A DNA stretch of 64,000 nt, taken from positions 183,113-247,112 of the IMG/VR virus record IMGVR_UViG_3300035703_000006, one strand, 5' to 3'. The translations under genes were made by a program, and so were the position numbers. The notes below the pieces were generated by a model that had not been told where the DNA came from, did no database searches, and worked only from the letters and a program-made list of their open reading frames with translations. Shown here in pieces: positions 3-37,678 of the stretch. Every line of letters starts with the position of its first letter. The stretch's first letter is position 1.

Positions 3-3000
3 GGAATTGGTTCTACTGGAATTCGTAAAACTTTAACTTATGATTATATAAATGATTCATTAAAATCGAGTGAAAATGTTAATATTGCTATAGGAAAAAC
101 TTATAAAATTGATGGAACTGATGTACTAAGTTCTACGACTCTTGGTGCTGGTGTAACTATTTCAAATATAAGAAGTGTAAATCCAGGATTAATTTTTGAT
201 AGAACTACATATTCACCAACTTCAGATGATTATTTGTTAATTTATGATAATGCCGATAATCAACTGAAAAAAGCAACAATTCAAAATGCTGCTTTACAGG
301 GTATTCAAGGTACTCAAGGTCTTCAAGGAACTCAAGGAACACAGGGTACTCAAGGTTTACAAGGTCTTCAGGGAACACAGGGCACTCAAGGAACTCAGGG
401 AACTCAAGGTACTCAGGGAACTCAAGGTACACAAGGAACTCAAGGTTTACAAGGACTTCAAGGAACTCAAGGTACACAAGGAACTCAAGGTTTACAAGGA
501 CTTCAAGGAACTCAAGGTACACAAGGAACTCAAGGTACTCAAGGTACACAAGGAACTCAAGGTACTCAAGGTACTCAAGGTACTCAAGGTACTCAAGGAA
601 CTCAAGGTACACAAGGAACTCAAGGTACTCAAGGTACACAAGGAACTCAAGGTACTCAAGGTACTCAAGGTACTCAAGGTACTCAAGGAACTCAAGGTTT
701 ACAAGGTCTTCAGGGAACTCAAGGTCTTCAGGGAACTCAAGGTCTTCAGGGAACTCAAGGTACACAAGGAACTCAAGGTACACAAGGAACTCAAGGTCTT
801 CAAGGTCTTCAAGGACTTCAAGGCACTCAAGGAACACAGGGTACTCAAGGAACACAGGGTACTCAAGGTACTCAAGGACTTCAAGGTACTCAAGGTACAC
901 AGGGAACTCAAGGAACTCAAGGTACACAGGGAACTCAAGGAACTCAAGGTACACAGGGAACTCAAGGTACACAGGGAACTCAAGGTACACAGGGAACTCA
1001 AGGAACTCAAGGAACTCAAGGTCTTCAAGGAACTCAAGGAACACAGGGTACTCAAGGTTTACAAGGTCTTCAGGGAACACAGGGCACTCAAGGAACTCAG
1101 GGAACTCAAGGTACTCAGGGAACTCAAGGTACACAAGGAACTCAAGGTTTACAAGGACTTCAAGGAACTCAAGGTACACAAGGAACTCAAGGTTTACAAG
1201 GACTTCAAGGAACTCAAGGTACACAGGGCACTCAAGGTACACAGGGCACTCAAGGTACACAGGGCACTCAAGGTACTCAAGGTACTCAAGGTACTCAAGG
1301 CACTCAAGGTACTCAAGGTACTCAAGGTACTCAAGGTACTCAAGGCACTCAAGGTACTCAAGGCACTCAAGGACTTCAAGGAACTCAAGGACTTCAAGGA
1401 ACTCAAGGAACACAGGGAACTCAAGGTCTCCAAGGCACACAGGGCACACAGGGAACTCAAGGTCTCCAAGGTACTCAAGGAACTCAAGGAACTCAAGGTC
1501 TCCAGGGTACTCAAGGTACACAGGGAACTCAAGGAACTCAAGGTCTCCAGGGTACTCAGGGAACTCAAGGTACACAAGGAACTCAAGGTTTACAAGGACT
1601 TCAAGGAACTCAAGGAACACAGGGTACTCAAGGTACTCAAGGTACTCAAGGAACACAGGGCACACAGGGAACTCAAGGTCCCCAAGGTACTCAAGGAACT
1701 CAAGGAACTCAAGGAACTCAAGGTCTTCAGGGAACTCAAGGAACTCAAGGAACTCAAGGAACTCAAGGTACACAAGGAACACAGGGTACTCAAGGAACAC
1801 AGGGTACTCAAGGTACTCAAGGTACTCAAGGAACACAGGGCACACAGGGAACTCAAGGTCTCCAAGGTACTCAAGGAACTCAAGGTCTTCAGGGAACTCA
1901 AGGAACTCAAGGAACTCAAGGTACACAAGGAACTCAAGGTATCACTGGGCCAGTAGCAGGTTCTGCAAATCAAATTATTTTCAAAGACATCTCCAATAAT
2001 CCAACTGGTTCTGGTAATTTAACTTTTGATGGATCTAATCTTTATGTCGGTGGAAATGTAACGATTGGTGGTACTAGTGTTCTTATTGCTGCCAATACTT
2101 TAACTGTAAAAGATAAAGATATTATTGTTGGACTTGCAACAACTGCTGGTGGAGTTGTAATTTCCAATGACACAACAGCAAATCATGGTGGTATTGCTGT
2201 TGCTTCTACCGAAGGAAATCCACTAATTGATATTAATGCTGGTGTTGGTACTGATGATATTCCATCCACATATAAGCAACTTATGTGGATTAAGGCAGGC
2301 ACTTTTACTGGTTTGAATACTGATGCGTGGATATCAAACTATGCAGTTGGTGTTGGTACTTTTGATCTTTCCAATGGAGTAAGATTTGCCGCAGGTGGAA
2401 TGAGAGTCAGTGATGACATTACAACTATCAATGCACTTGATGTAAATAAATTGTCTCCAAATGGCACTGATTTTGGTGCTGCATCTTATGTTCCAATTGC
2501 AGATGGTGCAGGAAATTGGAGTTGGGGAACAGTAAGTGCTGCTGGTGCGGCAACAACAAACGCAATTAATATTAGAGATGAAAATACCCCACAAGGAAGT
2601 GCAACAACACTAAACTTTACTGGAGATGGTATAAGTGCATCGGTTGCATCTGGAACTGCGACTATAACTGTTAATACTATTCAAGGTCTTCAGGGAACTC
2701 AAGGTACTCAAGGATTTCAAGGAACTCAAGGAACTCAAGGAACTCAAGGAACTACAGGTACTCAAGGAACTACAGGTACTCAAGGTACTCAAGGACTTCA
2801 AGGAACTCAAGGAACTACAGGTACTCAGGGAACTACAGGAACTCAAGGAACTACAGGAACTCAAGGAACTACAGGAACTCAGGGAACCACAGGTACTCAA
2901 GGAACCACAGGTACTCAAGGAACTACAGGTACTCAGGGAACTACAGGAACTCAAGGAACTACAGGTACTCAAGGTACTCAAGGACTTCAAGGAACTCAAG

Positions 3001-5015
3001 GAACTACAGGAACTCAAGGAACTACAGGAACTCAAGGAACCACAGGTACTCAGGGAACTACAGGTACTCAGGGAACTACAGGTACTCAGGGAACTACAGG
3101 AACTCAAGGAACTACAGGTACTCAAGGAACTACAGGTACTCAGGGAACTACAGGAACTCAAGGTTTACAGGGTTTACAAGGAAGACAGGGAACTCAAGGA
3201 ACTACAGGTACTCAAGGAACCACAGGTACTCAAGGAACCACAGGTACTCAAGGAACTACAGGTACTCAGGGAACTACAGGAACTACAGGTTTACAGGGTT
3301 TACAAGGAACTACAGGTACTCAGGGAACTACAGGAACTCAAGGAACTACAGGAACTCAAGGAACTACAGGAACTCAGGGAACCACAGGTACTCAAGGAAC
3401 TACAGGAACTCAGGGAACCACAGGTACTCAAGGAACTACAGGTACTCAAGGAACTCAAGGTTTACAGGGTTTACAAGGAAGACAGGGAACTCAAGGAACT
3501 ACAGGTACTCAGGGAACTACAGGAACTCAAGGAACTACAGGAACTCAAGGAACTACAGGAACTCAGGGAACCACAGGTACTCAAGGAACCACAGGTACTC
3601 AAGGAACTACAGGTACTCAGGGAACTACAGGAACTCAGGGAACCACAGGTACTCAAGGAACTACAGGAACTCAAGGTTTACAGGGTTTACAAGGAACTAC
3701 AGGAACTACAGGTACTCAAGGAACTACAGGTACTCAGGGAACTACAGGTACTCAGGGAACTACAGGTACTCAGGGAACTACAGGTACTCAAGGAACTACA
3801 GGAACTCAGGGAACTACAGGAACTCAAGGAACTACAGGTACTCAAGGTTTACAGGGTTTACAAGGAACTACAGGAACTACAGGTACTCAAGGAACTACAG
3901 GTACTCAGGGAACTACAGGTACTCAAGGAACTACAGGAACTCAGGGAACTACAGGAACTCAAGGAACTACAGGTACTCAAGGAACTACAGGTACTCAAGG
4001 AACTACAGGTACTCAGGGAACTACAGGTACTCAGGGAACTACAGGTACTCAGGGAACTACAGGTACTCAAGGAACTACAGGTACTCAAGGAACTCAAGGT
4101 TTACAGGGTTTACAAGGAAGACAGGGAACTCAAGGAACTACAGGTACTCAAGGAACTACAGGTACTCAAGGAACTACAGGTACTCAAGGAACTACAGGTA
4201 CTCAGGGAACTACAGGAACTCAAGGAACTACAGGAACTCAAGGAACTACAGGAACTCAGGGAACCACAGGTACTCAAGGAACTACAGGTACTCAAGGAAC
4301 TACAGGAACTACAGGTTTACAGGGTTTACAAGGAACTACAGGAACTACAGGTACTCAAGGAACTACAGGTACTCAGGGAACTACAGGTACTCAAGGAACT
4401 ACAGGAACTCAGGGAACTACAGGAACTCAAGGAACTACAGGTACTCAAGGAACTACAGGTACTCAGGGAACTACAGGAACTCAGGGAACCACAGGAACTC
4501 AGGGAACCACAGGAACAGGTACTCAGGGACTTCAGGGACTCCAAGGTCCTGCTGCCGCAGGAGGAGGTGGTGGTGGATCTTTAACGGTTATTGATGACAC
4601 AACTACAAATGCTACTTGGTATGTTGGAGTTCTTTCTGTTACGGCAGGAACTGCTTCAACCATTCATACTTCATCTACAAAACTCAACTTCAATCCAAGC
4701 ACTGGAACGTTATCAGCAACAGTCTTTACATCTCTTTCTGACCAAACACAGAAAACAAATGTAAGAAAGATTGAAAATGCTTTAGAAATAGTTAAAAAAA
4801 TTGAAGGTGTAAAATATGAATGGATCGACAATCACAACCAACCCTCAATCGGTGTAATTGCTCAGGAAATTGAAAAAGTACTTCCTGAAGTAGTGACAAC
4901 AAATGATAAGGGACTGAAGACAGTTTCTTATGGAAATATTGTTGGTTTGTTAATTGAAGCAATTAAAGAACAACAAGTTCAAATTGAAAAACTGGAGAAG
5001 AAAATAAATGCCTAA
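3..5015 (+). CDS. Collagen-like tail fibre/appendage protein with C-terminal intramolecular chaperone (peptidase S74-like); 5' end lies outside the window
   Basis: Frame is open from base 3 (GIGSTGIRKTL...), so the listed 234 start is internal. Two long Gly-X-Y tracts flank a phage fibre domain (VKDKDIIVG...GGIAV). C-terminus SLSD..KTNV..IENAL..V..IEGVKYEW..IGVIAQEIEKVLPEVV..VSYGNIVGLLIEAIKEQQ matches the S74 chaperone pattern. Confidence 0.88.
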   Translation, partial: GIGSTGIRKTLTYDYINDSLKSSENVNIAIGKTYKIDGTDVLSSTTLGAGVTISNIRSVNPGLIFDRTTYSPTSDDYLLIYDNADNQLKKATIQNAALQGIQGTQGLQGTQGTQGTQGLQGLQGTQGTQGTQGTQGTQGTQGTQGTQGLQGLQGTQGTQGTQGLQGLQGTQGTQGTQGTQGTQGTQGTQGTQGTQGTQGTQGTQGTQGTQGTQGTQGTQGTQGTQGTQGTQGLQGLQGTQGLQGTQGLQGTQGTQGTQGTQGTQGLQGLQGLQGTQGTQGTQGTQGTQGTQGLQGTQGTQGTQGTQGTQGTQGTQGTQGTQGTQGTQGTQGTQGTQGTQGLQGTQGTQGTQGLQGLQGTQGTQGTQGTQGTQGTQGTQGTQGLQGLQGTQGTQGTQGLQGLQGTQGTQGTQGTQGTQGTQGTQGTQGTQGTQGTQGTQGTQGTQGTQGTQGTQGTQGLQGTQGLQGTQGTQGTQGLQGTQGTQGTQGLQGTQGTQGTQGLQGTQGTQGTQGTQGLQGTQGTQGTQGTQGLQGLQGTQGTQGTQGTQGTQGTQGTQGTQGPQGTQGTQGTQGTQGLQGTQGTQGTQGTQGTQGTQGTQGTQGTQGTQGTQGTQGTQGTQGLQGTQGTQGLQGTQGTQGTQGTQGTQGITGPVAGSANQIIFKDISNNPTGSGNLTFDGSNLYVGGNVTIGGTSVLIAANTLTVKDKDIIVGLATTAGGVVISNDTTANHGGIAVASTEGNPLIDINAGVGTDDIPSTYKQLMWIKAGTFTGLNTDAWISNYAVGVGTFDLSNGVRFAAGGMRVSDDITTINALDVNKLSPNGTDFGAASYVPIADGAGNWSWGTVSAAGAATTNAINIRDENTPQGSATTLNFTGDGISASVASGTATITVNTIQGLQGTQGTQGFQGTQGTQGTQGTTGTQGTTGTQGTQGLQGTQGTTGTQGTTGTQGTTGTQGTTGTQGTTGTQGTTGTQGTTGTQGTTGTQGTTGTQGTQGLQGTQGTTGTQGTTGTQGTTGTQGTTGTQGTTGTQGTTGTQGTTGTQGTTGTQGTTGTQGLQGLQGRQGTQGTTGTQGTTGTQGTTGTQGTTGTQGTTGTTGLQGLQGTTGTQGTTGTQGTTGTQGTTGTQGTTGTQGTTGTQGTTGTQGTTGTQGTQGLQGLQGRQGTQGTTGTQGTTGTQGTTGTQGTTGTQGTTGTQGTTGTQGTTGTQGTTGTQGTTGTQGTTGTQGLQGLQGTTGTTGTQGTTGTQGTTGTQGTTGTQGTTGTQGTTGTQGTTGTQGTTGTQGLQGLQGTTGTTGTQGTTGTQGTTGTQGTTGTQGTTGTQGTTGTQGTTGTQGTTGTQGTTGTQGTTGTQGTTGTQGTTGTQGTQGLQGLQGRQGTQGTTGTQGTTGTQGTTGTQGTTGTQGTTGTQGTTGTQGTTGTQGTTGTQGTTGTQGTTGTTGLQGLQGTTGTTGTQGTTGTQGTTGTQGTTGTQGTTGTQGTTGTQGTTGTQGTTGTQGTTGTQGTTGTGTQGLQGLQGPAAAGGGGGGSLTVIDDTTTNATWYVGVLSVTAGTASTIHTSSTKLNFNPSTGTLSATVFTSLSDQTQKTNVRKIENALEIVKKIEGVKYEWIDNHNQPSIGVIAQEIEKVLPEVVTTNDKGLKTVSYGNIVGLLIEAIKEQQVQIEKLEKKINA
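300..1950 (+). repeat. 9-bp periodic tandem repeat encoding (GTQ/GLQ)n
   Basis: ggWactcaa / ggtcttcaa / ggtacacag units directly visible. Confidence 0.97.
2685..4550 (+). repeat. 18-bp periodic tandem repeat encoding (GTTGTQ)n with GLQ/GRQ punctuation
   Basis: ggaactacaggtactcaa units directly visible. Confidence 0.97.
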
Positions 5016-6198
5016 TCAATTTTTCTCACCAGAAGGAGATTTAGAAAACTATTTTGTATCAGAATACTGGTTAATTGACCAGTGGATTGGTGATGAATTG
5101 TGGAATTGGGGATATAATGTTTATGGAAACCTTGGAACCAATGATACAACTCAAAGAAATACTCCCGTCACCACATTTGCTGGAGGAACTAATTGGAATC
5201 AAGTTGATATCGGAGATCTTCATACTGCAGCAATCAAAACTGATGGAACCTTATGGATGTGGGGAAGAAATTTTGAAGTTCAACTTGGAACCAATGATTT
5301 AACCCAAAGAAATACTCCCGTCACTACATTTGCTGGAGGAATTAATTGGAAACAAGTTAGTTGTGGAGGTGGTCATACGGCAGCAATCAAGACTGATGGA
5401 ACCTTATGGATTTGGGGTTTAAATTCTTCAGCACAACTTGGAACTAATGATTCTATTACTAAAACTACTCCAGTCACCACATTTGCTGGAGGAACTAACT
5501 GGAAACAAGTTTCTTGTGGTGGTAATATGACAGCAGCAGTCAAAACAGATGGAACCTTATGGGGATGGGGTGCTAATACTACGGGTCAATTAGGAACTAA
5601 TGATACGACTCAGAGAAATACTCCAGTCACCACATTTTCTGGAGGAAATAACTGGAAACAAGTTTCTTGTGGTGGTATGCAGATAGCAGCAATCAAAACT
5701 GATGGAACCTTATGGATGTGGGGATTTAATCCTGAAGGAAACCTTGGAACCAATGATACGACTCAGAGAAATACACCTGTCACCACATTTTCTGGAGGGA
5801 CTAACTGGAAAAGAGTTAGTTGTGGGGGTAATCATACATCAGCAATCAAAACAGATGGAACTTTATGGACTTGGGGATATTCTAGTTATGGGTGTTTAGG
5901 AAATAATGATACGGGCAGCAGGTATACTCCAATAACCACTTTTGCTGGAGGAGTCAATTGGAAGCAAGTTGATGTTGGTACTCAACACACTGCAGCAATC
6001 AAAACAGATGGAACCTTATGGACTTGGGGATATAGTTATCTTGGTCGTTTGGGAAACAATGATTCGACATATGCACTTGGTATACTCACTCCAATCACTA
6101 CATTTTCTGGAGGAACTAACTGGAAACAAGTTTCTTGTGGATCCGTTTATACTGCAGCAGTTACTTCAGGACTCATAGCAGACCTACCTATCTCATAA
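5008..6198 (+). CDS. RCC1/BLIP-II-like beta-propeller (7 blades), probable tail-associated protein
   Basis: Repeats TPVTTFAGGTNWKQVSCG..HTAAIKTDGTLWxWG; overlaps the fibre gene stop. Confidence 0.85.
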   Translation: MPNQFFSPEGDLENYFVSEYWLIDQWIGDELWNWGYNVYGNLGTNDTTQRNTPVTTFAGGTNWNQVDIGDLHTAAIKTDGTLWMWGRNFEVQLGTNDLTQRNTPVTTFAGGINWKQVSCGGGHTAAIKTDGTLWIWGLNSSAQLGTNDSITKTTPVTTFAGGTNWKQVSCGGNMTAAVKTDGTLWGWGANTTGQLGTNDTTQRNTPVTTFSGGNNWKQVSCGGMQIAAIKTDGTLWMWGFNPEGNLGTNDTTQRNTPVTTFSGGTNWKRVSCGGNHTSAIKTDGTLWTWGYSSYGCLGNNDTGSRYTPITTFAGGVNWKQVDVGTQHTAAIKTDGTLWTWGYSYLGRLGNNDSTYALGILTPITTFSGGTNWKQVSCGSVYTAAVTSGLIADLPIS

Positions 6199-6216
6199 AT
6201 ACTTCAAAAACTTCTA

Positions 6217-6870
6217 ATGGAAATAGCATTAATTCATAATAACTCATTAATACTTGGACCGATGGGATTTAATGTCAGAATGATTAATTCTGACCTAGAT
6301 GATCTTGAATTGGAAGATAGAATAACAACTCAGAGTTACACTAATATTCCTATTCATTTTTCTGACGGATTAACACATCTTCTTTTAATAGAAAAGGAAG
6401 TTCCTGGATATGATCCAAAGTATTATAATCTTGGAAATTTTACTTGGGAAATTATAGAAGAGGGTAATGTTCCAGTTAAAGTCAAACTAACTTATCCATT
6501 AGTTGAAAAAACAATAGAAGAAGTTAAATATTTAAGAAAACAAGAAGTAACTACAGAAAGAAAACAAAAAGAAAATAAAATTATCAATCTCACAATTAAT
6601 GATTCTGAAATAAAAATATCAACAACAAGAGAAGAAAGATTGATGTTAGCATCAAAACTTTCAGCATCACCTGGATTGCATAATTATAAGTTCTCAAATA
6701 CTTGGTTGGAAATCACAAGTGAAAATCTTCAATATATTATTACTGAAGTTGATAAAGTTGTTCAATCTGCTTATGATTGGGAGTTATCAAAACTTCAAGA
6801 AATTGATGCGTGTCAAACTCTTGATGAAATTTATAATGTAATTATTAAAGAAGAAGTAGCAATCGGATGA
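6217..6870 (+). CDS. Tail-fibre-associated protein (DUF4376-like C-terminus)
   Basis: C-terminal KQEVTTERKQKE...VQSAYDWE....EIDACQTLDEI pattern; position among fibre genes. Confidence 0.55.
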   Translation: MEIALIHNNSLILGPMGFNVRMINSDLDDLELEDRITTQSYTNIPIHFSDGLTHLLLIEKEVPGYDPKYYNLGNFTWEIIEEGNVPVKVKLTYPLVEKTIEEVKYLRKQEVTTERKQKENKIINLTINDSEIKISTTREERLMLASKLSASPGLHNYKFSNTWLEITSENLQYIITEVDKVVQSAYDWELSKLQEIDACQTLDEIYNVIIKEEVAIG

Positions 6871-6877
6871 AGTAAAA

Positions 6878-10357: not shown

Positions 10358-10360
10358 ATA
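10353..10360 (+). promoter_or_regulatory. T4-type late promoter TATAAATA
   Basis: Exact gp55 consensus upstream of the modification operon. Confidence 0.7.
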
Positions 10361-10382
10361 TTTTTTAATTAAAAGACTTATA

Positions 10383-14694: not shown

Positions 14695-14706
14695 CACTCT
14701 CCCCAA

Positions 14707-15906: not shown

Positions 15907-15921
15907 TAATTAATAAAAACT

Positions 15922-17962: not shown

Positions 17963-18645
17963 TGAAAAATCATCCTGTAACTGAAACTGATTATTTTAAA
18001 ACCATTAAAATGGTGGTAGACAATATTCACAATACTGGAATGGTAGAAGCAGGTTCTGGGTACTGCTTAAGTATGAGTGACATTGTACTTAAACTTTTAC
18101 ACAAAGAAGGGATTAAGTCAAGACTTGTTGAGTGCAATTTAATGGTTACACTTAAAAACCCTCCTGGATTATTTTTGATTGGTTATCCTGGATTTAATCA
18201 GAATAACTATGATTCAGAAAAAATGATGCAAACGCATATTATTTGCATCACCGAGACTGAAATTCCCATTTTAATTGACACTAGTATTTCTCATATTGAT
18301 AAAAATGTTCCTTATATCTGTGCTCCAATTCTGAGAAATTATGAGCACGCAAATATTTCAGAGTATGAATTTGAAACAAGCACTTGGACATACACTGAGA
18401 AAAAAGAAACCGAAATAGAACTTCCAAAACTCCATCAAAAAAGTATTATTGATAGAATCAAAAAAGATACCGAAATACAAACTCAAATTAATTTTATTCG
18501 GAACTTTATGATTATTTTATTTGCAATATCGGGATTGAATTTAATTCGTGGTACATACGACTTTTACCAGACTTTTGTTAACCCGAATAGTGGTTGGGGT
18601 CCACAAAAAGTTCAAATACATAATACGAATGAGGTTAAAAAATGA
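17962..18645 (+). CDS. Hypothetical protein with C-terminal transmembrane segment
   Basis: In-operon ORF; GYC and H..C motifs; hydrophobic FMIILFAISGLNLI. Confidence 0.55.
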   Translation: MKNHPVTETDYFKTIKMVVDNIHNTGMVEAGSGYCLSMSDIVLKLLHKEGIKSRLVECNLMVTLKNPPGLFLIGYPGFNQNNYDSEKMMQTHIICITETEIPILIDTSISHIDKNVPYICAPILRNYEHANISEYEFETSTWTYTEKKETEIELPKLHQKSIIDRIKKDTEIQTQINFIRNFMIILFAISGLNLIRGTYDFYQTFVNPNSGWGPQKVQIHNTNEVKK

Positions 18646-20174
18646 AAATTACACTATACGCAATTGCAAAGAACGAAGAAAAAAATGTTTCAAAATTCGT
18701 TGAAATTTCAAAAAAGTTTGATGATGTTGTTGTAGTTGATACTGGAAGTACAGACAATACAATTCAACTACTCAGAGATGCTGGTGTTAAAGTCTATGAG
18801 CATCCACAAACAAGAGAAGAGTTTGATTTTTCAGTCGCAAGAAATCAGGCACTTTCTTATGTAGAAACAGATTGGGCATTTTCTATTGACTTCAATGAAG
18901 AATTGAGTGAATTCTTTTCAGAAGGTCTTGAAGTAATTTCTAATGAGTTCACCTCATTCAAGCATCAAAGATATGATAAAATTGGTGACCAAGAACCGAC
19001 TTTAGGGCAAGCAACACACATTCGTTTTCACAGAACTAAAAACTATACTTGGGTTAATGCTGTTCATGAAACCCCGATGTTTCTTCCAACAGAAGATTTT
19101 ATAAATGAATCAAGTGTAGACACTACAATAAAGATCATAAAAAACATTCAACCAAGTATTGATAAACAATTATTTTATCTTTCAATTTGTGAAAGAGAAT
19201 ATCAAAAAAATTCAGAAAATACTTATTACCTTTGGTTTATTTTTAAACATTATTTTGAGGTTAAAAATTTCCAAAAAGTATTAGAACTTGGTCAAGAGTA
19301 TCTTAATATTTCTAAAGCATACTTTGATCCTATGAGGATTGATATTTTTATTATGACTGGTCTTGCTTTAGTTAACTTACAAAATATAACATTAGCATCA
19401 AATTATGCATTCCATGCAGTAAGTGAAGCAATGAATATTGGTGGAGATGTTATGGGTAAGGCATTTACAAACCTTCTTGAAATTGGAAAACTGGTAAGAA
19501 ATCCGAATATTATTGTATTTGCTTCTGGATTTTCTGAAGTAACAAAATCACTTAAAGAAAGAACAGATGCGATTGATAAATTGTTTTTGACAAACTTGGA
19601 TGACACTCCATCAACTTCTTGGACTGGACATAGAGACTTTGCGGAATGGTTAGTACGATTCACAAATCCAAAAGTTGTCGTAGATCTTGGGGTTGATTTT
19701 GGATATTCTACGTTCTCATTTGCATTTCCAAGAATTGGTCATGTGTATGGAATTGATAATTTTGTTGGAGATGATTATATTGGAATTGATGACCAAAGAT
19801 TGAAGTATAATTTTGTTACGATGAAGAGAGAAAAACTTCATCTTCAAGATTATATAACTTTCATTGAAGGAACTTTTGATGAAGTAGCAAAAACTTGGGA
19901 TAAACCAATTGACATTCTTCACATTGATGGAAGTCATCATTATGAAGATATCAAAAATGATTTTGAAACTTGGAGTAAATTTGTTTCTGATGATGGAATT
20001 ATTTTACTTCATGACACTTGCGTAGAAACTGCTTTTGGTAGAGAGTATGGTGTTAAAAAGTTTTTTGAAGAAATAGATTTACCAAAATTTACATTCACTC
20101 ATTGTTATGGTCTTGGAGTTGTTTGTAAAAATCCAATTATTTTAGATCAAATTAAGAATACTCTTTGCTTATGA
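18642..20174 (+). CDS. GT2 glycosyltransferase + TPR + class I SAM methyltransferase fusion
   Basis: IAKNEE..VVVDTGSTDNT..FDFSVARN; C-terminal VVDLGVDFGYS..IDILHIDGSH.YE..ILLHD. Confidence 0.82.
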   Translation: MKITLYAIAKNEEKNVSKFVEISKKFDDVVVVDTGSTDNTIQLLRDAGVKVYEHPQTREEFDFSVARNQALSYVETDWAFSIDFNEELSEFFSEGLEVISNEFTSFKHQRYDKIGDQEPTLGQATHIRFHRTKNYTWVNAVHETPMFLPTEDFINESSVDTTIKIIKNIQPSIDKQLFYLSICEREYQKNSENTYYLWFIFKHYFEVKNFQKVLELGQEYLNISKAYFDPMRIDIFIMTGLALVNLQNITLASNYAFHAVSEAMNIGGDVMGKAFTNLLEIGKLVRNPNIIVFASGFSEVTKSLKERTDAIDKLFLTNLDDTPSTSWTGHRDFAEWLVRFTNPKVVVDLGVDFGYSTFSFAFPRIGHVYGIDNFVGDDYIGIDDQRLKYNFVTMKREKLHLQDYITFIEGTFDEVAKTWDKPIDILHIDGSHHYEDIKNDFETWSKFVSDDGIILLHDTCVETAFGREYGVKKFFEEIDLPKFTFTHCYGLGVVCKNPIILDQIKNTLCL

Positions 20175-20527
20175 AAATGATGATTCCTGTTTCAGTAGGA
20201 GAATTGATTGATAAGATCACGATTCTCGAAATTAAAGTATTTCTCACTGATGATGAATATGTTCACAAAGAGTTGAATGAATTGAATAAAATTAAATCAA
20301 CTCTTACTCAATATACTTTAGATTATGAAGTTCAACTTAAAAAAGTAAATGAAGATCTTTGGAAAATTGAAGATAAACTCAGAAAACTCGAAAAAGAACA
20401 AAAATTTGATGACGAATTTATAGACCTTGCTCGGAGTGTATATATAAAAAATGATGAACGAGCAAGAATTAAAAAAGAAATTAATATTGTTTGCAATTCA
20501 GATTACCAAGAAATAAAAATTTATTGA
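20171..20527 (+). CDS. DUF6165-like coiled-coil protein
   Basis: PVSVGELIDKITILEIK..LW.IED..F..LARSVY..ND.RA.IK..IN. Confidence 0.7.
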   Translation: MKMMIPVSVGELIDKITILEIKVFLTDDEYVHKELNELNKIKSTLTQYTLDYEVQLKKVNEDLWKIEDKLRKLEKEQKFDDEFIDLARSVYIKNDERARIKKEINIVCNSDYQEIKIY

Positions 20528-20532
20528 ATTTT

Positions 20533-21507
20533 ATGAGCAACTTTGTTAAACTTGCATTGGAAAGTGGAGGAACAATCAAACCTTTAATGTTTGATTCAAA
20601 AGATTTTACAGGACCTTCTTTAAATAATCCATCTGTTTTAATTGTAAATGATAAAATATTAGTAAATATTAGAAATGTTAACTATACATTGTATCACTCA
20701 GAACTGGATAGATTTGAACATATCTGGGGTCCATTGACATATGTTCACCCAGAAGATGATATGCATCTTAGGACTTGGAATTATATTGCTCAATTGGATG
20801 ATGACTTAAATATAGAACATTATTCAAAAATAGATACTTCTAAATTTCCAGACCAAGAACTTTGGGAATTTGTTGGACTAGAAGATGGTCGTTTAGTGGA
20901 TTGGGAAGACAAAATATACTTATGCGGTGTTAGAAGGGATACGACACCCAATGGTGTCGGAAGAATGGAAATGTGTGAACTTGAATTTGATGACCTGTCT
21001 GTAAGAGAAGTGTCTAGATATAGAATTCCTGGACCACCTCCTGATGATGAATATTGTATGAAAAATTGCACTCCAATAGAAGGAAAACCATTTCATTTAA
21101 TTAAGTGGACCAATCCAACTTGCATTATGAAATTTGATCCTAATGGAGGAGAAACAATAGTCCAAGAAACCACTTCATATGTTCCTGGTTATAATGATAT
21201 GAGGGGTGGTTCTCAAGTTATTAAATATAAAGATGGTTATTTAACTATAATTCATGAAACGGATTTATATGATTCCGTCCAAGGAAGAAAGAATGGAACA
21301 TATAGGCATAGGTTTGTATATTGGAATCATGATTTTACAGAACAAAAATTTTCTAGATTATTTTCTTTCTTAAATATGAAAATAGAATTTTGTTGTGGTT
21401 TAACAAAACATAAAAATGATTACCTAATCACATTTGGTGCATCAGATAATGCTGCATATATTTTAAAAATTTCTGAGTCTTTTCTGGAGGATTTTATCAA
21501 TGAATGA
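20533..21507 (+). CDS. Five-bladed beta-propeller glycosidase/phosphorylase-like (GH130-like) protein
   Basis: NPS, GLEDGRL, KN.TP, RGGSQ, Y.HRF, IEFCCGL, ITFG..D motifs. Confidence 0.65.
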   Translation: MSNFVKLALESGGTIKPLMFDSKDFTGPSLNNPSVLIVNDKILVNIRNVNYTLYHSELDRFEHIWGPLTYVHPEDDMHLRTWNYIAQLDDDLNIEHYSKIDTSKFPDQELWEFVGLEDGRLVDWEDKIYLCGVRRDTTPNGVGRMEMCELEFDDLSVREVSRYRIPGPPPDDEYCMKNCTPIEGKPFHLIKWTNPTCIMKFDPNGGETIVQETTSYVPGYNDMRGGSQVIKYKDGYLTIIHETDLYDSVQGRKNGTYRHRFVYWNHDFTEQKFSRLFSFLNMKIEFCCGLTKHKNDYLITFGASDNAAYILKISESFLEDFINE

Positions 21508-23464
21508 ACTAATTGAATTTTGTTTGGATACAGAAAATCCAGAAAAAAATTATAAACTAGCACAATGGTATGAAAAGCAAAATCATACTGCATCTGCTCA
21601 TGTTTATTACTTTAGAACGGCAGAAAGAACAGATACTAAAAATCTTGCATATACTTCACTTCTTCGTTCATCAATTTGTTATAAAAGTCAAGGAAAAAGA
21701 GACGCAACTGAAAAATTATTAATTCATGCTGCTTTATCTTATCTACAAGAAAGACCTGAAGCATATTACTTTCTTTCTTTATTTTATCAACGAAAGGAAG
21801 AATGGGACCAATGTTATTTGTATGCAGACTTTGGATTAAAATGTTATGAAAATCAAATAGATTCAATAGATTTACCAGAGTATCAAGGAAAATATGCACT
21901 CATTTATCAAAAAGCACTTGCCTCTTGGTGGTGGGGAAGAGGAGAAGAAAGTAAAAAACTTTTTCAGAGTCTTAAGGATGAATATTGGAATGTCATGAAC
22001 GATGATTATAAAAATCTTGTTGACGAAAAATTATTTACTTTCCATCAAGTTCCAAACTCTAGAGGAGAAAAAAATTATATTAAAAAAATTACAACACTTG
22101 ATAATTCAATTCTAGAAAAATATAATTTAAATTCAGAACATTTTGAAACTACTTTTGAATTTGATTGGGGAGTGAATTGTAGTAATATGAATGAAATTAT
22201 CAAAAAAGAAATATTTGAAGAAAATATTTACGAAAAATTTTTCTCAGTCAAAGAAAACGATATTGTAATGGACATTGGAGCAAATGTTGGAGCATTTTCT
22301 TATTCAATTTTAAACAAAAAACCAAAACATATTTACTGCATAGAACCTTCTGTTAATCTAATTAGTGCGATTAAAAACAATTTAAAGGGGCATAGTGCAA
22401 CTATCATAAATTGTGCAGTTTCAAATGAAAATAATAAATCTAAAAAACCTAATGAGAATGTGTATATTTACTCTCATGAAGGAGAATATGAGACAAAAAC
22501 TTTTAAAAGTATTCTTGAGGAGTATAATATTGACCACATAGATTTTTTAAAAATTGATTGCGAAGGTGGGGAATATGATGTATTTAATGAAGAAAACAAA
22601 GATTTTATTTTAAATAAAGTCAAGTATATTGTAGGAGAATGGCATTTTACTGGGATTGAAAATTTCTTAGAAAAATTTAAAAAATTTAGAGAACTTTATT
22701 TAAGTAATCACAATAATTATAGAGTTTTTGAAAGATGTGGAAAAGAAATAACTGACAAAATATTTGATGATGATTATCTGATTGGTTTTGAGCAATGGTA
22801 TCGTGAAAATGGGGATGGACAACTTACGATTTATATTAATAATGATATTGAAAATAATAAAAAACAATTTTTTTCAATTAATGAATATAAAAAATCAACT
22901 AGTTGGATTGTAGATAATTTTTATGATAATCCAGATGAGATTCGTAAGTTTGCTTTAGAGCAAGAATTTGGAGATGAAAGTGTAATTACTGGATTTGTTG
23001 GTAGAAGAACATTTAATCAATTTTTATTCCCAGGATTGAAAGAAGAATTTGAATCTGTAATGGGTAAAAAGATTACAAAATGGGAAGAACACGGAATGAA
23101 TGGAAGATTTCAAATCTGTTGGTCTGGGGAACGACTAGTTTATCATTGCGATGAACAAATGTGGGGAGGTATGATTTATCTAACTCCAAATGCACCATAT
23201 CAATGTGGAACTACATTATATGCTGACAAGAAAAATAGGGCAAGGACTTATTATGATCCAGGTTGGGATGAATATTGGGCAAATACTCCTGGAGATTGTC
23301 ATCTAGACAAAACACCATTTGAACCAGTAGACGTTCTTGGTAATGTATACAATCGTCTTGTAATTTTTGATGCAAGTTGTATTCATTCTGCCTCTGAATA
23401 CTTTGGGACTAATAAAGAAAATGCAAGATTATGGCAAATGTTCTTTTTTGATACAGAAAAATAA
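21500..23464 (+). CDS. TPR + FkbM methyltransferase + 2OG-Fe(II) oxygenase-like fusion
   Basis: ERPEAYY TPR; DIGANVG.F, LKIDCEGGEY; IVDNFY.NP..R, H.D, YLTP, YNRLVIFDA..IHS..RL.Q.FFF. Confidence 0.78.
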   Translation: MNELIEFCLDTENPEKNYKLAQWYEKQNHTASAHVYYFRTAERTDTKNLAYTSLLRSSICYKSQGKRDATEKLLIHAALSYLQERPEAYYFLSLFYQRKEEWDQCYLYADFGLKCYENQIDSIDLPEYQGKYALIYQKALASWWWGRGEESKKLFQSLKDEYWNVMNDDYKNLVDEKLFTFHQVPNSRGEKNYIKKITTLDNSILEKYNLNSEHFETTFEFDWGVNCSNMNEIIKKEIFEENIYEKFFSVKENDIVMDIGANVGAFSYSILNKKPKHIYCIEPSVNLISAIKNNLKGHSATIINCAVSNENNKSKKPNENVYIYSHEGEYETKTFKSILEEYNIDHIDFLKIDCEGGEYDVFNEENKDFILNKVKYIVGEWHFTGIENFLEKFKKFRELYLSNHNNYRVFERCGKEITDKIFDDDYLIGFEQWYRENGDGQLTIYINNDIENNKKQFFSINEYKKSTSWIVDNFYDNPDEIRKFALEQEFGDESVITGFVGRRTFNQFLFPGLKEEFESVMGKKITKWEEHGMNGRFQICWSGERLVYHCDEQMWGGMIYLTPNAPYQCGTTLYADKKNRARTYYDPGWDEYWANTPGDCHLDKTPFEPVDVLGNVYNRLVIFDASCIHSASEYFGTNKENARLWQMFFFDTEK

Positions 23465-23470
23465 TTTAAT

Positions 23471-24634
23471 TTACTCTATCCAAGTTCTTATATACTCACT
23501 TTTATATAATTTTTGAATTGAAGATTTTACTTCTGGAAAAATTACTTCCCCAGAAGTAATTTCAAAATTAAATGATTGAGTATTTCCAGAATAAAATTCA
23601 CAAGAAAATTCTCCAACTAATATTTCTTTACTTTGTTTAATATAATCTGGTGAGTCATCAAAACTAAGATATATCTTATAAAATCCTTTACCATATTGAA
23701 TTTCTTCTATTTTTGGCATAACATATTGAACAAATTGATTTTTAATATCAACATTAATGTCACAAAAATTAAGTTTTTGACCATAATAAATTATTAATTG
23801 TTTAATCTCATTAATTGTTTTTTGAATCACATCATCATTTAAATACATTTGCCAATTTAGATGTTTTGTATTGTCATAATCTGGCTGCTTTCTAAAACCA
23901 TCTGGTGCAAACATTCTTAATCCATTATCTGACATTCTGGATGAAAAAAATGGTCCCATACCATAAGTATCAATCAAACCAAGTATATTTACTTTTTTTC
24001 TTTTAGACAAGATACTTAAAATTGATTGATCGTGTCTATGACCTTTATACTCATTTAATTGCTCAAAATCATCGTCATCATTCACTAAAGAATAATTGTC
24101 CTCTGTGACCAAATTTAACCATTCTTTTACAAAATTAATGGACTCTTGAGATTTTTTACAAATAAAAACTCCCCCTTCAATTTGACCAGAGTTTAAAAAA
24201 TTTTCATCATTTTCTAAACTAAATCTTTTGAGTACTTTCATTTTTTGAAAATACTTTTCTTTATAGTCTGGAGGATTTCCACAAGACCCTCCATCACAAA
24301 AAACAAGAATTGGAGTAGAATTCAGCATTTCTAGATACTCTTCAAATCTTTTATTTCTATGTTTTAAAATACAACCACCAGAATCAATATAAAAAATATT
24401 GTCTCCCTCATTAATTTTTTCTAATAAATCTAAAATAATATAAGGTTTCCAAATCCAATATCCATATCCTCTAGAATTAGTAACAAAGTCTTTATGTTTA
24501 ATAAAAAAATTTGAAAGAGTTTCTGGTGAATGGATAATAACTTTATCAAACCATCCAGTATCCTCTGCTTGTTTCTTTAAGATTTGTTTTTTATAATTAA
24601 AATAATCATCCCCGAAAGATATTAAATAATTCAT
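23471..24634 (-). CDS. Glycosyltransferase-like protein, the only convincing minus-strand gene
   Basis: RGYGYWIWKPYII..FYIDSG..HRHDQSILS; own divergent promoter. Confidence 0.7.
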   Translation of the reverse strand: MNYLISFGDDYFNYKKQILKKQAEDTGWFDKVIIHSPETLSNFFIKHKDFVTNSRGYGYWIWKPYIILDLLEKINEGDNIFYIDSGGCILKHRNKRFEEYLEMLNSTPILVFCDGGSCGNPPDYKEKYFQKMKVLKRFSLENDENFLNSGQIEGGVFICKKSQESINFVKEWLNLVTEDNYSLVNDDDDFEQLNEYKGHRHDQSILSILSKRKKVNILGLIDTYGMGPFFSSRMSDNGLRMFAPDGFRKQPDYDNTKHLNWQMYLNDDVIQKTINEIKQLIIYYGQKLNFCDINVDIKNQFVQYVMPKIEEIQYGKGFYKIYLSFDDSPDYIKQSKEILVGEFSCEFYSGNTQSFNFEITSGEVIFPEVKSSIQKLYKSEYIRTWIE

Positions 24635-24682
24635 ATTTAAATTTATTGTATATTATAATTTATCTTCAAACCCAACAGAGTG

Positions 24683-37674: not shown

Positions 37675-37678
37675 CCTT

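What the first reader, a model, noticed from the sequence alone, without database searches (positions are those of the whole stretch)
3..24634. Proline-poor Thr-rich collagen fibre next to a protein-glycosylation/sulfation/methylation island
Seen: roughly 1,170 residues of Gly-Thr-Gln/Gly-Thr-Thr triplets with almost no Pro, followed by about 13 modifying-enzyme genes. Three carry TPR modules (TPR-GT9-like, GT2-TPR-MTase, TPR-FkbM-oxygenase); there is also a sulfotransferase and a GH130-like enzyme. Known: TPR-fused glycosyltransferases commonly act on proteins, and Thr glycosylation can stabilise hydroxyproline-poor collagen helices (vent-worm cuticle collagen). Inference: the phage builds a glycosylated and possibly sulfated/methylated collagen whisker, using glycans in place of hydroxyproline.
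Basis: partly seen in the sequence, partly recalled or inferred. Interest (0 to 1): 0.65.

Follow-up and report, generated by a model that had tools for sequence, protein, structure and literature searches.

The report
Phage fibre cluster with protein-modifying enzymes
A freshwater cyanophage encodes a giant proline-poor collagen tail fibre next to propeller-shaped fibre proteins and soluble sugar-, methyl- and sulfate-adding enzymes, but related phages show that the enzymes travel with the propeller proteins and not with the collagen.

Summary
The collagen observation is real. Window 3-5015 is the last 1,670 residues of a 2,844-aa fibre that starts 3.5 kb upstream of the window. It has 486 Gly-X-Y triplets (GTQ/GLQ, then GTQ/GTT), five Pro inside the rods, and a C-terminal S74 self-cleaving chaperone.

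The downstream "island" is one tightly packed operon, but it is not only enzymes. Seven genes have supported catalytic domains, one is a Cys-rich accessory protein, and about six are unknown or only weakly assigned.

- S-SRM01, a complete isolate genome, has the syntenic island and no collagen at all.
- A 90%-complete phage with a 697-triplet GTQ/GLQ/GVQ fibre has no TPR-GT9.
- Relatives pair the island with Thr-free collagens.

Across about 100 loci the steady neighbours of TPR-GT9 are RCC1, DUF4376, a CxxC protein (fused to it in some phages), a small methyltransferase, and a sulfotransferase or APS kinase. One relative fuses collagen, RCC1 and S74 in a single fibre.

The best reading is a cytoplasmic protein-modification module for fibre proteins. 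It has TPR adaptors, a SunS-like GT2 and no membrane parts. This is inferred, not shown.

The parts
3..5015 (+). C-terminal 1,670 residues of a 2,844-aa tail fibre. The gene starts 3,520 nt upstream of the window, at genome 179,593.
   Evidence: Open frame; Collagen 563 bits and Peptidase_S74 55 bits; the C-terminus hits many tail-fibre PHROGs.
300..1955 (+). Collagen rod 2: 184 Gly-X-Y triplets (147 GTQ, 33 GLQ), with 2 Pro.
2685..4511 (+). Collagen rod 3: 203 triplets (94 GTQ, 88 GTT, 17 GLQ), with no Pro.
4737..4895 (+). S74 intramolecular chaperone (self-cleaving trimerisation) domain of the fibre.
   Evidence: PF13884 matches residues 1579-1631 of P0001.
5008..6198 (+). RCC1 beta-propeller protein (396 aa). 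Its start overlaps the fibre stop by 8 nt.
   Evidence: PF25390 297 bits, RCC1 228 bits; spacing.
6217..6870 (+). DUF4376 / tail-fibre-like protein (217 aa).
   Evidence: PF14301 17.8 bits, below the cut-off; phrog_10508 'tail fiber protein' E 7e-7. It recurs beside RCC1 in 26 of 40 distant loci.
6878..10357 (+). Triple RCC1 propeller protein (1,159 aa).
   Evidence: PF25390 1,200 bits, 18 RCC1 repeats.
10383..11729 (+). TPR + GT9-like glycosyltransferase (448 aa).
   Evidence: Sub-threshold TPR hits; Atlas features 0.97 with 29 of 30 hits being Glyco_transf_9; homologues pass the PF01075 cut-off; 26,398 representatives in the family.
11713..12195 (+). 2OG-Fe(II) oxygenase (160 aa).
   Evidence: PF13759 48 bits; phrog_81.
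12164..12886 (+). Unknown 240-aa protein with an invariant D-A-D motif. It is accessory: absent from S-SRM01.
   Evidence: No family or PDB hit; distribution; invariants.
12859..13671 (+). Unknown conserved 270-aa protein, with a paralogue in the phage's other sugar cluster.
13668..14348 (+). Unknown conserved 226-aa protein.
14338..14694 (+). CxxCxxCC-type protein with 8 invariant Cys (118 aa from the ATG at 14338); probable subunit of the TPR-GT9 enzyme.
   Evidence: 43% identical (E 3e-30) to the N-terminus of P0139, whose remainder is a TPR-GT9. Invariant Cys. Present near TPR-GT9 in 21 of 40 distant loci.
14707..15906 (+). RCC1 beta-propeller protein (399 aa), sitting in the middle of the enzyme genes.
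   Evidence: PF25390 307 bits.
15922..16704 (+). Sulfotransferase (260 aa).
   Evidence: PF13469 52 bits and PF00685 50.7 bits, both over their cut-offs.
16701..17396 (+). Probable GT-A glycosyltransferase (231 aa) with an invariant E-D-D motif.
   Evidence: Model pTM 0.75; Foldseek E 4e-6 to GT2-type GT-A domains; invariants.
17378..17962 (+). FkbM-family methyltransferase (194 aa); accessory.
   Evidence: PF05050 56.8 bits; distribution.
17947..18645 (+). Unknown 232-aa protein; accessory.
   Evidence: No hits; homologues found in L010 and L059.
18642..20174 (+). GT2 (GT-A) + TPR-like helical repeat + SAM methyltransferase (510 aa).
   Evidence: PF00535 and PF13578; model; SunS 7msp_B Z 21.4 over model residues 1-285, and O-methyltransferases including the sugar methyltransferase MeT1 at Z about 16 over residues 303-499.
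20165..20527 (+). DUF6165 coiled-coil protein (120 aa).
   Evidence: PF19662 46 bits.
20491..21507 (+). Weakly GH130-like protein (338 aa).
   Evidence: PF04041 18.7 bits, below the cut-off of 26; conserved in L059 and L100.
21500..23464 (+). Phage TPR adaptor + FkbM methyltransferase + DUF6445 (oxygenase-like) domain (654 aa).
   Evidence: PF05050 53 bits, DUF6445 22 bits. N-terminal 200 aa is TPR by Atlas features 0.94 and TM 0.83-0.90. The C-terminal domain stands alone right after TPR-GT9 in at least 11 distant loci.
23471..24634 (-). Unknown 387-aa protein on the opposite strand; marks the end of the cluster.
   Evidence: No hits. Divergent sigma-70-like sites and a terminator-like hairpin lie at 24683-24841.

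Best explanation
This is the host-recognition cluster of a freshwater T4-type cyanomyovirus related to Synechococcus phage S-SRM01. One co-directional operon with overlapping genes encodes three kinds of product.

1. A 2,844-aa trimeric fibre. Its three Pro-poor collagen rods are probably held by Thr/Gln hydration, as in other prokaryotic collagens. It folds from a C-terminal S74 chaperone.
2. Three RCC1 beta-propeller proteins and a DUF4376 tail-fibre-like protein. In a relative these propellers are literally part of a collagen-S74 fibre, so here they are taken to be fibre or receptor-binding parts.
3. A set of soluble enzymes.

I infer that the enzymes work in the host cytoplasm on these phage fibre proteins before assembly. 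The TPR-GT9 enzyme, together with its Cys-rich metal-binding partner, and the SunS-like GT2 attach sugars to protein. GT-A enzymes extend the glycan. FkbM and class-I methyltransferases O-methylate the sugars. The sulfotransferase adds sulfate from host PAPS. The 2OG oxygenases either prepare acceptor residues or modify the sugars. The TPR domains act as substrate adaptors.

The constant companion of the enzyme core across phage lineages is the RCC1/DUF4376 set, so that set is the likeliest acceptor. The collagen rods may also be decorated, but the island is not an adaptation to them.

Shown: the gene content, domain and fold assignments, the synteny, and the co-occurrence counts. Inferred: that the substrate is protein, which protein it is, the sugar donor, and the order of the steps.
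For: - One operon: gaps of -68 to +25 nt from the fibre stop to 23464, with no membrane segment in any product.
- Protein-directed features: TPR + GT-B architecture like the flagellin O-glycosyltransferase FlmG, whose TPR domain binds the substrate (PMC7591256). The GT2 + helical repeat superposes on the glycocin peptide glycosyltransferases SunS/ThuS (Z 21.4, rmsd 2.7, 263 residues). The TPR adaptor of the 654-aa protein recurs in phage proteins fused to GT25, FkbM, radical-SAM/SPASM and WavE domains.
- RCC1 propellers are fibre parts: L074:3-3071 reads collagen, RCC1, collagen, RCC1, S74 in one frame.
- Close relatives: the enzyme core sits next to RCC1 genes in all 50 loci that share 60-93% identity.
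- Distant relatives: in 40 loci with 32-50% identity and at least 8 kb upstream, RCC1 is present in 30, DUF4376 in 26, sulfotransferase in 27, CxxC in 21 and the small methyltransferase in 37.
- Compact cassettes RCC1-DUF4376-(MT)-TPR-GT9 occur away from any fibre gene in L053 and L054.
- Three records without TPR-GT9 also lack RCC1.
- The CxxC protein is fused to TPR-GT9 in P0139 and P0272.
- Sugar and sulfate supply travels with the module elsewhere: APS kinase in 18 of 53 loci, HldE-type heptose kinase/adenylyltransferase hits in 11 of 53 and an SDR epimerase in 11 of 53.
- The window's own genome has a GDP-fucose cluster.
Against: - No direct evidence exists that any virion protein is glycosylated.
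- Co-location could reflect a shared hypervariable region where fibre genes and auxiliary genes pile up (PMC7029224).
- GT9, GT25 and WavE relatives and the fucosyltransferases are classically LPS enzymes, and cytoplasmic O-antigen transferases are also soluble.
- One clade (L081-L087) has TPR-GT9 and sulfotransferase beside giant collagens and no RCC1, and its one whole record searched (G014, 52% complete) has none. L055 has a tailspike-like gene instead. So RCC1 is not an obligatory partner.
- The window's own protein does not reach the Pfam GT9 cut-off (E 0.22).
- The models are of middling confidence (pLDDT 69-73).
- This genome has no APS kinase or heptose pathway.
- The complex prediction for CxxC + TPR-GT9 could not be run.
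Confidence: 0.45

Rival explanations
1. The enzymes O-glycosylate (and methylate and sulfate) the Thr residues of the collagen rods, and the glycans replace hydroxyproline as the stabiliser of the triple helix.
For: - The fibre gene is the first gene of the same operon, and it carries about 500 Thr in its rods.
- Glycosylated Thr-rich collagen-like proteins exist, for example BclA (review PMC8968730). The vent-worm cuticle collagen is cited from my own knowledge.
- Some relatives pair TPR-GT9 + sulfotransferase with giant collagens and no RCC1 (L081-L087).
- L072 has a GAT/GTT fibre with Thr in Y, next to the module.
Against: - Island without collagen: S-SRM01 has none in its complete genome, and the fibre beside the island is collagen-free in L033 and L036-L040.
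- Island with Thr-free collagen: L044 has a Thr fraction of 0.02, L010 0.07, L031 0.0. The L081-L087 collagens are GFQ/GNQ/GYQ.
- GTQ collagen fibres without the island: G005, with 697 triplets and 90% complete, has no TPR-GT9, and the positive controls ring.
- No significant association: odds ratio 2.6, p = 0.17.
- Thr is in X in 410 of 500 cases, whereas the known stabilising glyco-Thr sits in Y.
- Thr/Gln-rich prokaryotic collagens are regarded as stable through hydration networks without modification.
Confidence: 0.12
2. Host-surface remodelling. The island, perhaps together with the GDP-fucose cluster at genome 100-117 kb, builds or alters host LPS, O-antigen or sulfated exopolysaccharide during infection. 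The purpose would be to block superinfection or change adsorption. This is the usual reading of 'LPS genes' in cyano- and pelagimyophages.
For: - This is the literature default for glycosyltransferases in the host-recognition cluster (PMC7029224; PMC12801897).
- The GT9 family and its GT25, WavE, GT10 and GT11 relatives are LPS-type enzymes.
- HldE-like ADP-heptose genes occur in relatives.
Against: - The island has no flippase, polymerase, initiating transferase or any membrane protein.
- It has three TPR adaptors and a SunS/ThuS-like peptide-glycosyltransferase fold.
- The genes overlap structural fibre genes and are interleaved with RCC1 fibre-domain genes, which suggests late co-expression with virion parts.
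- The module moves together with RCC1/DUF4376 even when it is away from other genes.
Confidence: 0.25
3. No common function. The stretch is a hypervariable dumping ground where unrelated auxiliary genes sit beside fibre genes, or the transferases modify DNA or small molecules.
For: - Accessory genes come and go between close relatives: the 240-aa, 194-aa, 232-aa, GH130-like and 654-aa genes.
- Several ORFs have no assignable function.
Against: - A core of about ten genes keeps its order across 50 loci.
- A smaller core (TPR-GT9, methyltransferase, CxxC, sulfotransferase, RCC1, DUF4376) persists at 32-50% identity.
- There is a gene fusion of CxxC with TPR-GT9.
- Sulfotransferases and TPR-fused transferases are not known DNA-modifying enzymes (own knowledge).
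Confidence: 0.08

Closest known systems
Synechococcus phage S-SRM01 (NC_070963), genes gp334-gp349
   Same: Same gene order: S74 fibre, RCC1, hypothetical (DUF4376), RCC1, TPR protein, 2OG oxygenase, hypotheticals, RCC1, sulfotransferase, hypothetical, glycosyltransferase. Proteins are 42-91% identical.
   Different: Its fibres have no collagen: they carry Ser/Gly/Tyr-rich 12-residue repeats instead. It lacks the 240-aa, FkbM-194, 232-aa, GH130-like and 654-aa genes. The paper on it does not discuss this region.
Host recognition cluster of pelagimyophages and cyanomyophages (Zaragoza-Solas et al. 2020, PMC7029224)
   Same: A variable region of T4-type aquatic myophages in which tail-fibre genes, collagen repeats and glycosyltransferases sit together.
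   Different: That work reads the transferases as host O-chain modifiers. It does not describe the RCC1, DUF4376, CxxC, TPR-GT9 and sulfotransferase core found here.
FlmG, flagellin O-glycosyltransferase of Caulobacter (PMC7591256)
   Same: An N-terminal TPR domain that binds the protein substrate plus a C-terminal GT-B glycosyltransferase; the enzyme is cytoplasmic.
   Different: Homology to FlmG was not tested here. The phage enzyme is GT9-like and has a Cys-rich partner, and its donor and acceptor are unknown.
SunS / ThuS glycocin S-glycosyltransferases (PDB 7msp, 7msn, 7msk)
   Same: The GT-A domain plus the following helical repeat superpose on the model: Z 19.6-21.4, 263-269 residues, 17-20% identity. 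These enzymes glycosylate peptides (own knowledge).
   Different: The phage protein has an extra C-terminal O-methyltransferase domain, and it has no known peptide substrate.
Glycosylated Thr-rich collagen-like proteins (Bacillus BclA; vent-worm cuticle collagen)
   Same: Collagen repeats rich in Thr and lacking hydroxyproline, with a dedicated glycosylation machinery (the vent-worm case is from my own knowledge).
   Different: There Thr is in Y (GPT or GxT). Here it is mostly in X, with Gln in Y and almost no Pro. The co-occurrence test fails.
Virus-encoded virion glycosylation (mycobacteriophage capsid and tail tube; Mimivirus collagen and fibrils)
   Same: The viral genome carries transferases and methyltransferases next to structural genes, and virion proteins are the substrate (as cited in PMC12619734, and PMC8968730).
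   Different: No sulfotransferase, RCC1 propeller, GT9-like enzyme or CxxC partner is described there. Modification here is unproven.

Membership tests
Collagen triple-helix repeat protein (PF01391) | Long uninterrupted Gly-X-Y repeats. | tested here: met
   486 triplets in three runs, and 563 bits for the in-window part.
Collagen triple-helix repeat protein (PF01391) | Forms a trimeric triple helix. | not testable with these tools
   Only indirect support: a C-terminal S74 trimerisation/chaperone domain.
Peptidase_S74 intramolecular-chaperone tail fibres | C-terminal S74 domain over the Pfam cut-off, at the very end of a fibre protein. | tested here: met
   55.3 bits against a cut-off of 22, residues 1579-1631 of 1,670; tail-fibre PHROGs.
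Peptidase_S74 intramolecular-chaperone tail fibres | Autocleavage at the conserved Ser-Lys site. | tested here: inconclusive
   An S-D-x-x-x-K stretch precedes the domain. The motif is recalled from memory, and cleavage is not testable.
Glycosyltransferase family 9 (PF01075) | The protein reaches the family's score cut-off. | tested here: not met
   The window's protein gives E 0.22 and 11.3 bits against a cut-off of 22. Homologues P0125 (109 bits) and P0245 (37.8 bits) pass, and Atlas features score 0.97. It is therefore 'GT9-like', a distant relative.
Glycosyltransferase family 9 (PF01075) | ADP-heptose donor. | not testable with these tools
   HldE-type genes accompany the module in 11 of 53 distant loci but are absent from this genome.
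TPR-fused protein O-glycosyltransferases (FlmG type) | N-terminal TPR domain plus C-terminal GT-B domain in a soluble protein. | tested here: met
   comparison with PMC7591256.
TPR-fused protein O-glycosyltransferases (FlmG type) | Sequence homology to FlmG, and a protein acceptor. | not tested
   No FlmG sequence was at hand, and the acceptor is unknown.
SunS/ThuS-type peptide glycosyltransferases | GT-A catalytic domain followed by a TPR-like helical domain, with the same fold. | tested here: met
   Z 21.4, rmsd 2.7, 263 aligned residues, model residues 1-285; model pLDDT 72.6.
PAPS-dependent sulfotransferases (PF00685 / PF13469) | Family score over the cut-off across the whole domain. | tested here: met
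   50.7 and 52 bits against cut-offs of 22 and 27, residues 6-215.
Glyco-Thr-stabilised collagens (BclA / vent-worm type) | Thr in the Y position of most triplets. | tested here: not met
   Y is Gln in 394 triplets and Thr in 90; X is Thr in 410.
Glyco-Thr-stabilised collagens (BclA / vent-worm type) | The collagen and its glycosylation genes co-occur across genomes. | tested here: not met
   Dissociation in both directions and p = 0.17.
Host recognition cluster of T4-type aquatic myophages | A variable block after the baseplate genes that holds fibre genes plus glycosyltransferases. | tested here: met
   In S-SRM01 the baseplate wedge genes lie just upstream. Relatives carry T4 neck, gp32 and gp59 genes beside the module. 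Gene content varies between close relatives.
GH130 glycoside phosphorylases | Family score over the cut-off. | tested here: not met
   18.7 bits against a cut-off of 26, covering only the C-terminal 90 residues.

The most novel reading that the evidence does not exclude
A widespread, undescribed phage system. Aquatic T4-type myophages would decorate their RCC1-propeller (and sometimes collagen) fibre proteins in the host cytoplasm. The machinery would be a TPR-GT9 enzyme with its Cys-rich metal-binding subunit, a neighbouring 2OG oxygenase, small methyltransferases and a PAPS-dependent sulfotransferase. Some lineages even bring APS kinase and an ADP-heptose pathway. The product would be the first sulfated, methylated glycoprotein on a phage virion, with RCC1 propellers as a new class of receptor-binding fibre domain.
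Probability: 0.3. Interest if true: 0.8.

Novelty: new variant of a known kind. Interest (0 to 1): 0.55.

Why it matters
If the module modifies fibre proteins, host recognition by a large group of freshwater and marine myophages would depend on phage-made glycans, not only on protein sequence. More than 569 IMG/VR stretches carry the TPR-GT9, and this phage turns up in metagenomes from 12 studies. That would affect host-range prediction, phage-host arms races in cyanobacterial blooms, and the meaning of the many 'LPS genes' annotated in cyanophages.

It also gives a concrete, testable set in a cultured phage: S-SRM01 gp335-gp347. The negative result matters too. Giant Pro-poor GTQ collagens are common in phages that lack any such enzymes, so these rods do not need glycans to exist.

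Tried and rejected
- Pfam, NCBIfam and PHROGs gave no usable assignment for the 240-, 270-, 226-, 231-, 232- and 387-aa ORFs, even at E up to 10.
- Profiles of orthologues of four of these ORFs, searched against PDB sequences, found nothing significant.
- hhalign of the GT2-MT profile and of the 654-aa N-terminal profile against the TPR-GT9 profile was not significant (probability 16% and 0.6%). The TPR nature of those two domains therefore rests on the fold match and the Atlas only.
- The phmmer search of TPR-GT9 against PDB found only designed TPRs.
- The word-indexed protein search returned only close relatives with no names beyond 'TPR repeat protein'.
- The promoter and terminator scan found no more sites than in shuffled sequence, so transcription timing could not be inferred.
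- The literature search for RCC1 in cyanophages returned culture-collection strain numbers. No paper combining sulfotransferase, tail fibre and phage terms was found, nor any open paper on the SunS TPR.
- DNA glycosylation was considered and set aside: the TPR adaptors, the sulfotransferase and the SunS-like fold do not fit it.
- No accessory gene tracks the Thr content of the fibre among close relatives.

Full report
WHERE THE WINDOW LIES. The window is the last 64 kb of a single 247,112-bp viral contig. Its nearest named relative is Synechococcus phage S-SRM01, a 240.8-kb freshwater cyanomyovirus (Kyanoviridae, Serangoonvirus). Pieces of the region are about 74% identical to it at the DNA level. 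Near-identical DNA occurs in contigs of freshwater, subsurface and wastewater metagenomes from 12 studies, and no RNA run holds it.

THE FIBRE. The frame at 3..5015 is open and reads 1,670 residues. It continues upstream of the window to an ATG at genome position 179,593, giving a 2,844-aa protein.

The protein has a 779-residue non-collagen N-terminal part, then three uninterrupted Gly-X-Y rods of 99, 184 and 203 triplets, separated by globular inserts of about 200 and 240 residues. Those 486 triplets make 1,458 residues, of which 1,161 lie in the window. X is Thr in 410 triplets and Leu in 67. Y is Gln in 394 and Thr in 90, and all but two of the Y-Thr are GTT triplets of the last rod. Only five Pro fall inside the rods.

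Pfam gives Collagen at 563 bits and, at the very C-terminus, Peptidase_S74 at 55 bits. The last 167 residues match many tail-fibre PHROGs. The DNA is a degenerate tandem array with units of 18 to 54 nt at about 80% identity. It is under-stated in length, and most of the Thr sit in X, not Y.

The genome has a second GTQ/GLQ collagen protein of 1,383 aa with 150 triplets and no S74 domain. According to a review, Thr- and Gln-rich collagen-like regions are common in prokaryotes and are thought to be stabilised by hydration networks without modification (PMC8968730).

THE 'ISLAND'. From the fibre stop to 23464 there are 18 co-directional ORFs with gaps of -68 to +25 nt. That makes one operon with the fibre gene, and no product has a membrane-spanning segment.

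Four of the 18 are not enzymes:
- RCC1 beta-propeller proteins at 5008-6198, 6878-10357 (three propellers) and 14707-15906.
- A DUF4376 protein at 6217-6870 that matches a tail-fibre PHROG.

Supported enzymes:
- TPR + GT9-like transferase, 10383-11729. The TPR hits are just under their cut-offs. The C-terminal half scores 0.97 by Atlas features, with 29 of 30 hits being GT9. Homologues pass the GT9 cut-off.
- A 2OG-Fe(II) oxygenase.
- A sulfotransferase.
- A 231-aa protein whose model has a GT-A fold and an invariant E-D-D motif.
- An FkbM methyltransferase.
- A 510-aa GT2 + helical repeat + methyltransferase.
- A 654-aa TPR + FkbM + DUF6445 protein.

In the 510-aa protein, the first 285 residues superpose on the peptide glycosyltransferases SunS/ThuS (Z 21.4, rmsd 2.7, 263 residues). 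The last 200 residues superpose on O-methyltransferases, among them the sugar methyltransferase MeT1.

In the 654-aa protein, the N-terminal 200 residues are a TPR domain. The same domain recurs in phage proteins fused to GT25, FkbM, radical-SAM/SPASM and WavE domains.

The 'GH130-like' gene is below the family cut-off. Five further ORFs could not be assigned by family scans or by profile searches of PDB sequences. The 137-aa ORF is really a 118-aa protein with eight invariant Cys.

TESTING THE LINK TO COLLAGEN. I tested both directions.

Forward direction:
- 50 IMG/VR loci carry a 60-93% identical TPR-GT9, and nearly all keep the same core of about ten genes.
- The S74 fibre just upstream is collagen-free in S-SRM01, L033 and L036-L040.
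- It has Thr-free collagen in L044 (174 triplets of GNQ/GVQ/GLQ), L010 (GAQ/GVQ) and L031.
- It has Thr-rich collagen in L016 and L048.
- The complete S-SRM01 genome has no Collagen-family match at all. Its fibres carry Ser/Gly/Tyr-rich repeats instead.

Reverse direction:
- 80 loci were found through the fibre's C-terminal domain.
- Many have giant GTQ/GLQ/GVQ fibres with no TPR-GT9, RCC1 or sulfotransferase within 10 kb.
- The 177-kb, 90%-complete record behind L124 (fibre of 3,105 aa, 697 triplets) has no TPR-GT9 anywhere, while two positive controls ring at E 1e-153 and 1e-175.
- Among 50 non-redundant loci, the island-present to island-absent counts are 6:8 for Thr-containing collagen fibres, 1:9 for other collagens and 7:19 for fibres with no or short collagen. 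The odds ratio is 2.6 with p = 0.17, and this is not corrected for kinship, which would inflate it.

The two features are therefore separable in both directions.

WHAT THE ENZYMES DO TRAVEL WITH. A profile search found 26,398 representatives of the TPR-GT9 family. Among them are giant cyanobacterial proteins with several tandem TPR-GT9 modules.

About 600-aa members carry an N-terminal domain that is 43% identical (E 3e-30) to the window's Cys-rich protein. This gene fusion marks the two as partners.

I examined 53 more distant viral loci (32-50% identity). In the 40 of them with at least 8 kb upstream, the neighbours of TPR-GT9 are:
- a small methyltransferase in 37,
- RCC1 in 30,
- sulfotransferase in 27,
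- DUF4376 in 26,
- the CxxC protein in 21,
- an S74 fibre in 21,
- APS kinase in 10,
- HldE-type heptose kinase/adenylyltransferase in 8,
- a stand-alone DUF6445-like oxygenase domain in 8, placed right after TPR-GT9.

Collagen occurs in 12 of the 53. Compact RCC1-DUF4376-(MT)-TPR-GT9 cassettes occur with no fibre gene beside them (L053, L054). Three records without TPR-GT9 also lack RCC1.

In L074 a single frame reads collagen, RCC1 propeller, short collagen, RCC1 propeller, S74 chaperone. L071 has a collagen-RCC1 fusion in one frame too. So the RCC1 propellers are fibre domains.

There are exceptions. L081-L087 place TPR-GT9 and a sulfotransferase 3 kb from giant GFQ/GNQ/GYQ collagens with no RCC1 beside them, and the one whole record of that clade that I searched (G014, 52% complete) has no RCC1 either. 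L055 has a tailspike-like gene instead.

MECHANISM. The evidence favours a cytoplasmic protein-modification module acting on fibre proteins of the host-recognition cluster:
- The enzymes are soluble, with TPR adaptors.
- One has a FlmG-like architecture; in FlmG the TPR domain binds flagellin and is needed for glycosylation (PMC7591256).
- One has a SunS/ThuS-like peptide transferase fold.
- Methyltransferases and a sulfotransferase could finish the glycan.
- The genes are coupled to and interleaved with fibre genes.

Supply lines fit this reading. Relatives bring APS kinase and an ADP-heptose pathway. This genome brings neither. It does have a 16-kb cluster at genome 100.3-116.6 kb with GDP-mannose 4,6-dehydratase, three more SDR enzymes, and GT10, GT11, GT25, GT47-like and GT1-like transferases.

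The acceptor is inferred, not shown. RCC1/DUF4376 proteins are the steadiest companions, so they are my first choice, and the collagen rods may be decorated as well. I put this reading at 0.45.

The main rival, at 0.25, is the literature's default: that such genes remodel host LPS or exopolysaccharide (PMC7029224; PMC12801897). The GT9, GT25 and WavE kinships favour it. The lack of any membrane component and the TPR/SunS features count against it.

COMPARISON WITH WHAT IS KNOWN. The block is a member of the host-recognition cluster described for pelagi- and cyanomyophages, and it is syntenic with unannotated genes of S-SRM01, whose paper does not discuss them. Virion glycosylation by phage-encoded enzymes is known for mycobacteriophages, and hydroxylation with glycosylation of viral collagen is known for Mimivirus (as cited). 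In the searchable library I found no description of the core made of RCC1, DUF4376, CxxC, TPR-GT9, oxygenase and sulfotransferase/APS kinase, nor of RCC1 propellers as fibre domains. I therefore rate it a new variant of a known kind.

LIMITS.
- All functional statements are inferences from sequence, fold and gene neighbourhood.
- The two structure models have middling confidence (pLDDT 72.6 and 69.2).
- Locus sets were collected through the query proteins and are not phylogenetically independent.
- Many IMG/VR records are fragments.
- The complex prediction could not be run.

Noticed in passing
Outside the window: genome 100,333-116,595 (locus L057): A second block of about 16 kb and about 20 co-directional genes for sugar work. 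It holds GDP-mannose 4,6-dehydratase (510 bits), three more SDR epimerase/dehydratases, GT25, a GT47-like gene, GT10 alpha-1,3-fucosyltransferase, GT11 alpha-1,2-fucosyltransferase and a GT1-like gene. A paralogue of the island's 270-aa protein lies in it.
   Followed up: partly
Outside the window: genome 162,511-166,662 (partly in L058): A second collagen-like protein of 1,383 aa with 150 GTQ/GLQ triplets and no S74 domain.
   Followed up: partly
L074:3-3071 (P0288); also L071:1-2358: Single fibre ORFs in related phages. L074 joins collagen (GAT/GQT, Thr in Y), two RCC1 propellers and an S74 chaperone. L071 joins collagen and RCC1. RCC1 propellers therefore appear to be a fibre or receptor-binding domain class.
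   Followed up: partly
L081-L087, about nt 100-6900 of each: Giant collagens made of aromatic and amide triplets (GFQ, GYQ, GNQ, GHQ; 390-490 triplets, almost no Thr or Pro). They lie 3 kb upstream of a TPR-GT9 + sulfotransferase pair, with no RCC1 beside them; the one record of this clade searched whole (G014, behind L082) has none either.
   Followed up: partly
Window 14338-14694, and P0139 / P0272: The 8-Cys CxxCxxCC protein is fused to the N-terminus of TPR-GT9 in about 600-aa homologues (43% identity, E 3e-30). This suggests a metal-binding subunit of the transferase.
   Followed up: partly
P0125 (3,114 aa, Oscillatoriales MAG) and other hits: Giant proteins of 1,300-3,100 aa with 3-8 matched stretches to the TPR-GT9 profile; the one checked is cyanobacterial. 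The family has 26,398 representatives at E <= 1e-3.
   Followed up: no
Window 21500-22099 (N-terminal 200 aa of the 654-aa protein): A phage-specific TPR adaptor domain. By predicted structure (TM 0.83-0.90) it heads phage proteins that carry GT25, FkbM, radical-SAM/SPASM or WavE domains. It looks like a common targeting module for many enzymes.
   Followed up: no
L056:7063-9053; L100:14088-16399; 11 of 53 distant loci: HldE-type (PfkB + cytidylyltransferase-like) genes and, in a similar number of loci, SDR epimerase genes, as for ADP-heptose synthesis, lie next to the TPR-GT9 module in some phages. APS kinase occurs in 18 of 53. None of these is in the window's own genome.
   Followed up: partly
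Window 37587-44648 and 61780-61854: 27 tRNA genes, including Gly-GCC/TCC, Thr-AGT/TGT and Gln-TTG. These read the codons that dominate the collagen rods: ACT 342, CAA 286, GGA 265, GGT 194, ACA 142. The set is nearly complete, so the fit may be incidental.
   Followed up: no
Window 61737-61773 and 45245-45401: An Rfam abiF RNA match (50.8 bits against a threshold of 37) lies just before tRNA-Arg. There is also a borderline permuted-tmRNA match (47.9 against 47).
   Followed up: no
Window 24635-24883: The only sizeable intergenic gap of the region. It has divergent sigma-70-like sites matching 11 of 12 positions on both strands, and a strong terminator-like hairpin at 24824-24841. It may be the boundary between the fibre operon and the next module.
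   Followed up: no
Window 24884-27076, 27154-28290, 38995-39834: A 730-aa protein matching phrog_459 'peptidase' (E 2e-249), an AAA_5 ATPase, and a Dam-type D12 N6-adenine DNA methyltransferase.
   Followed up: no
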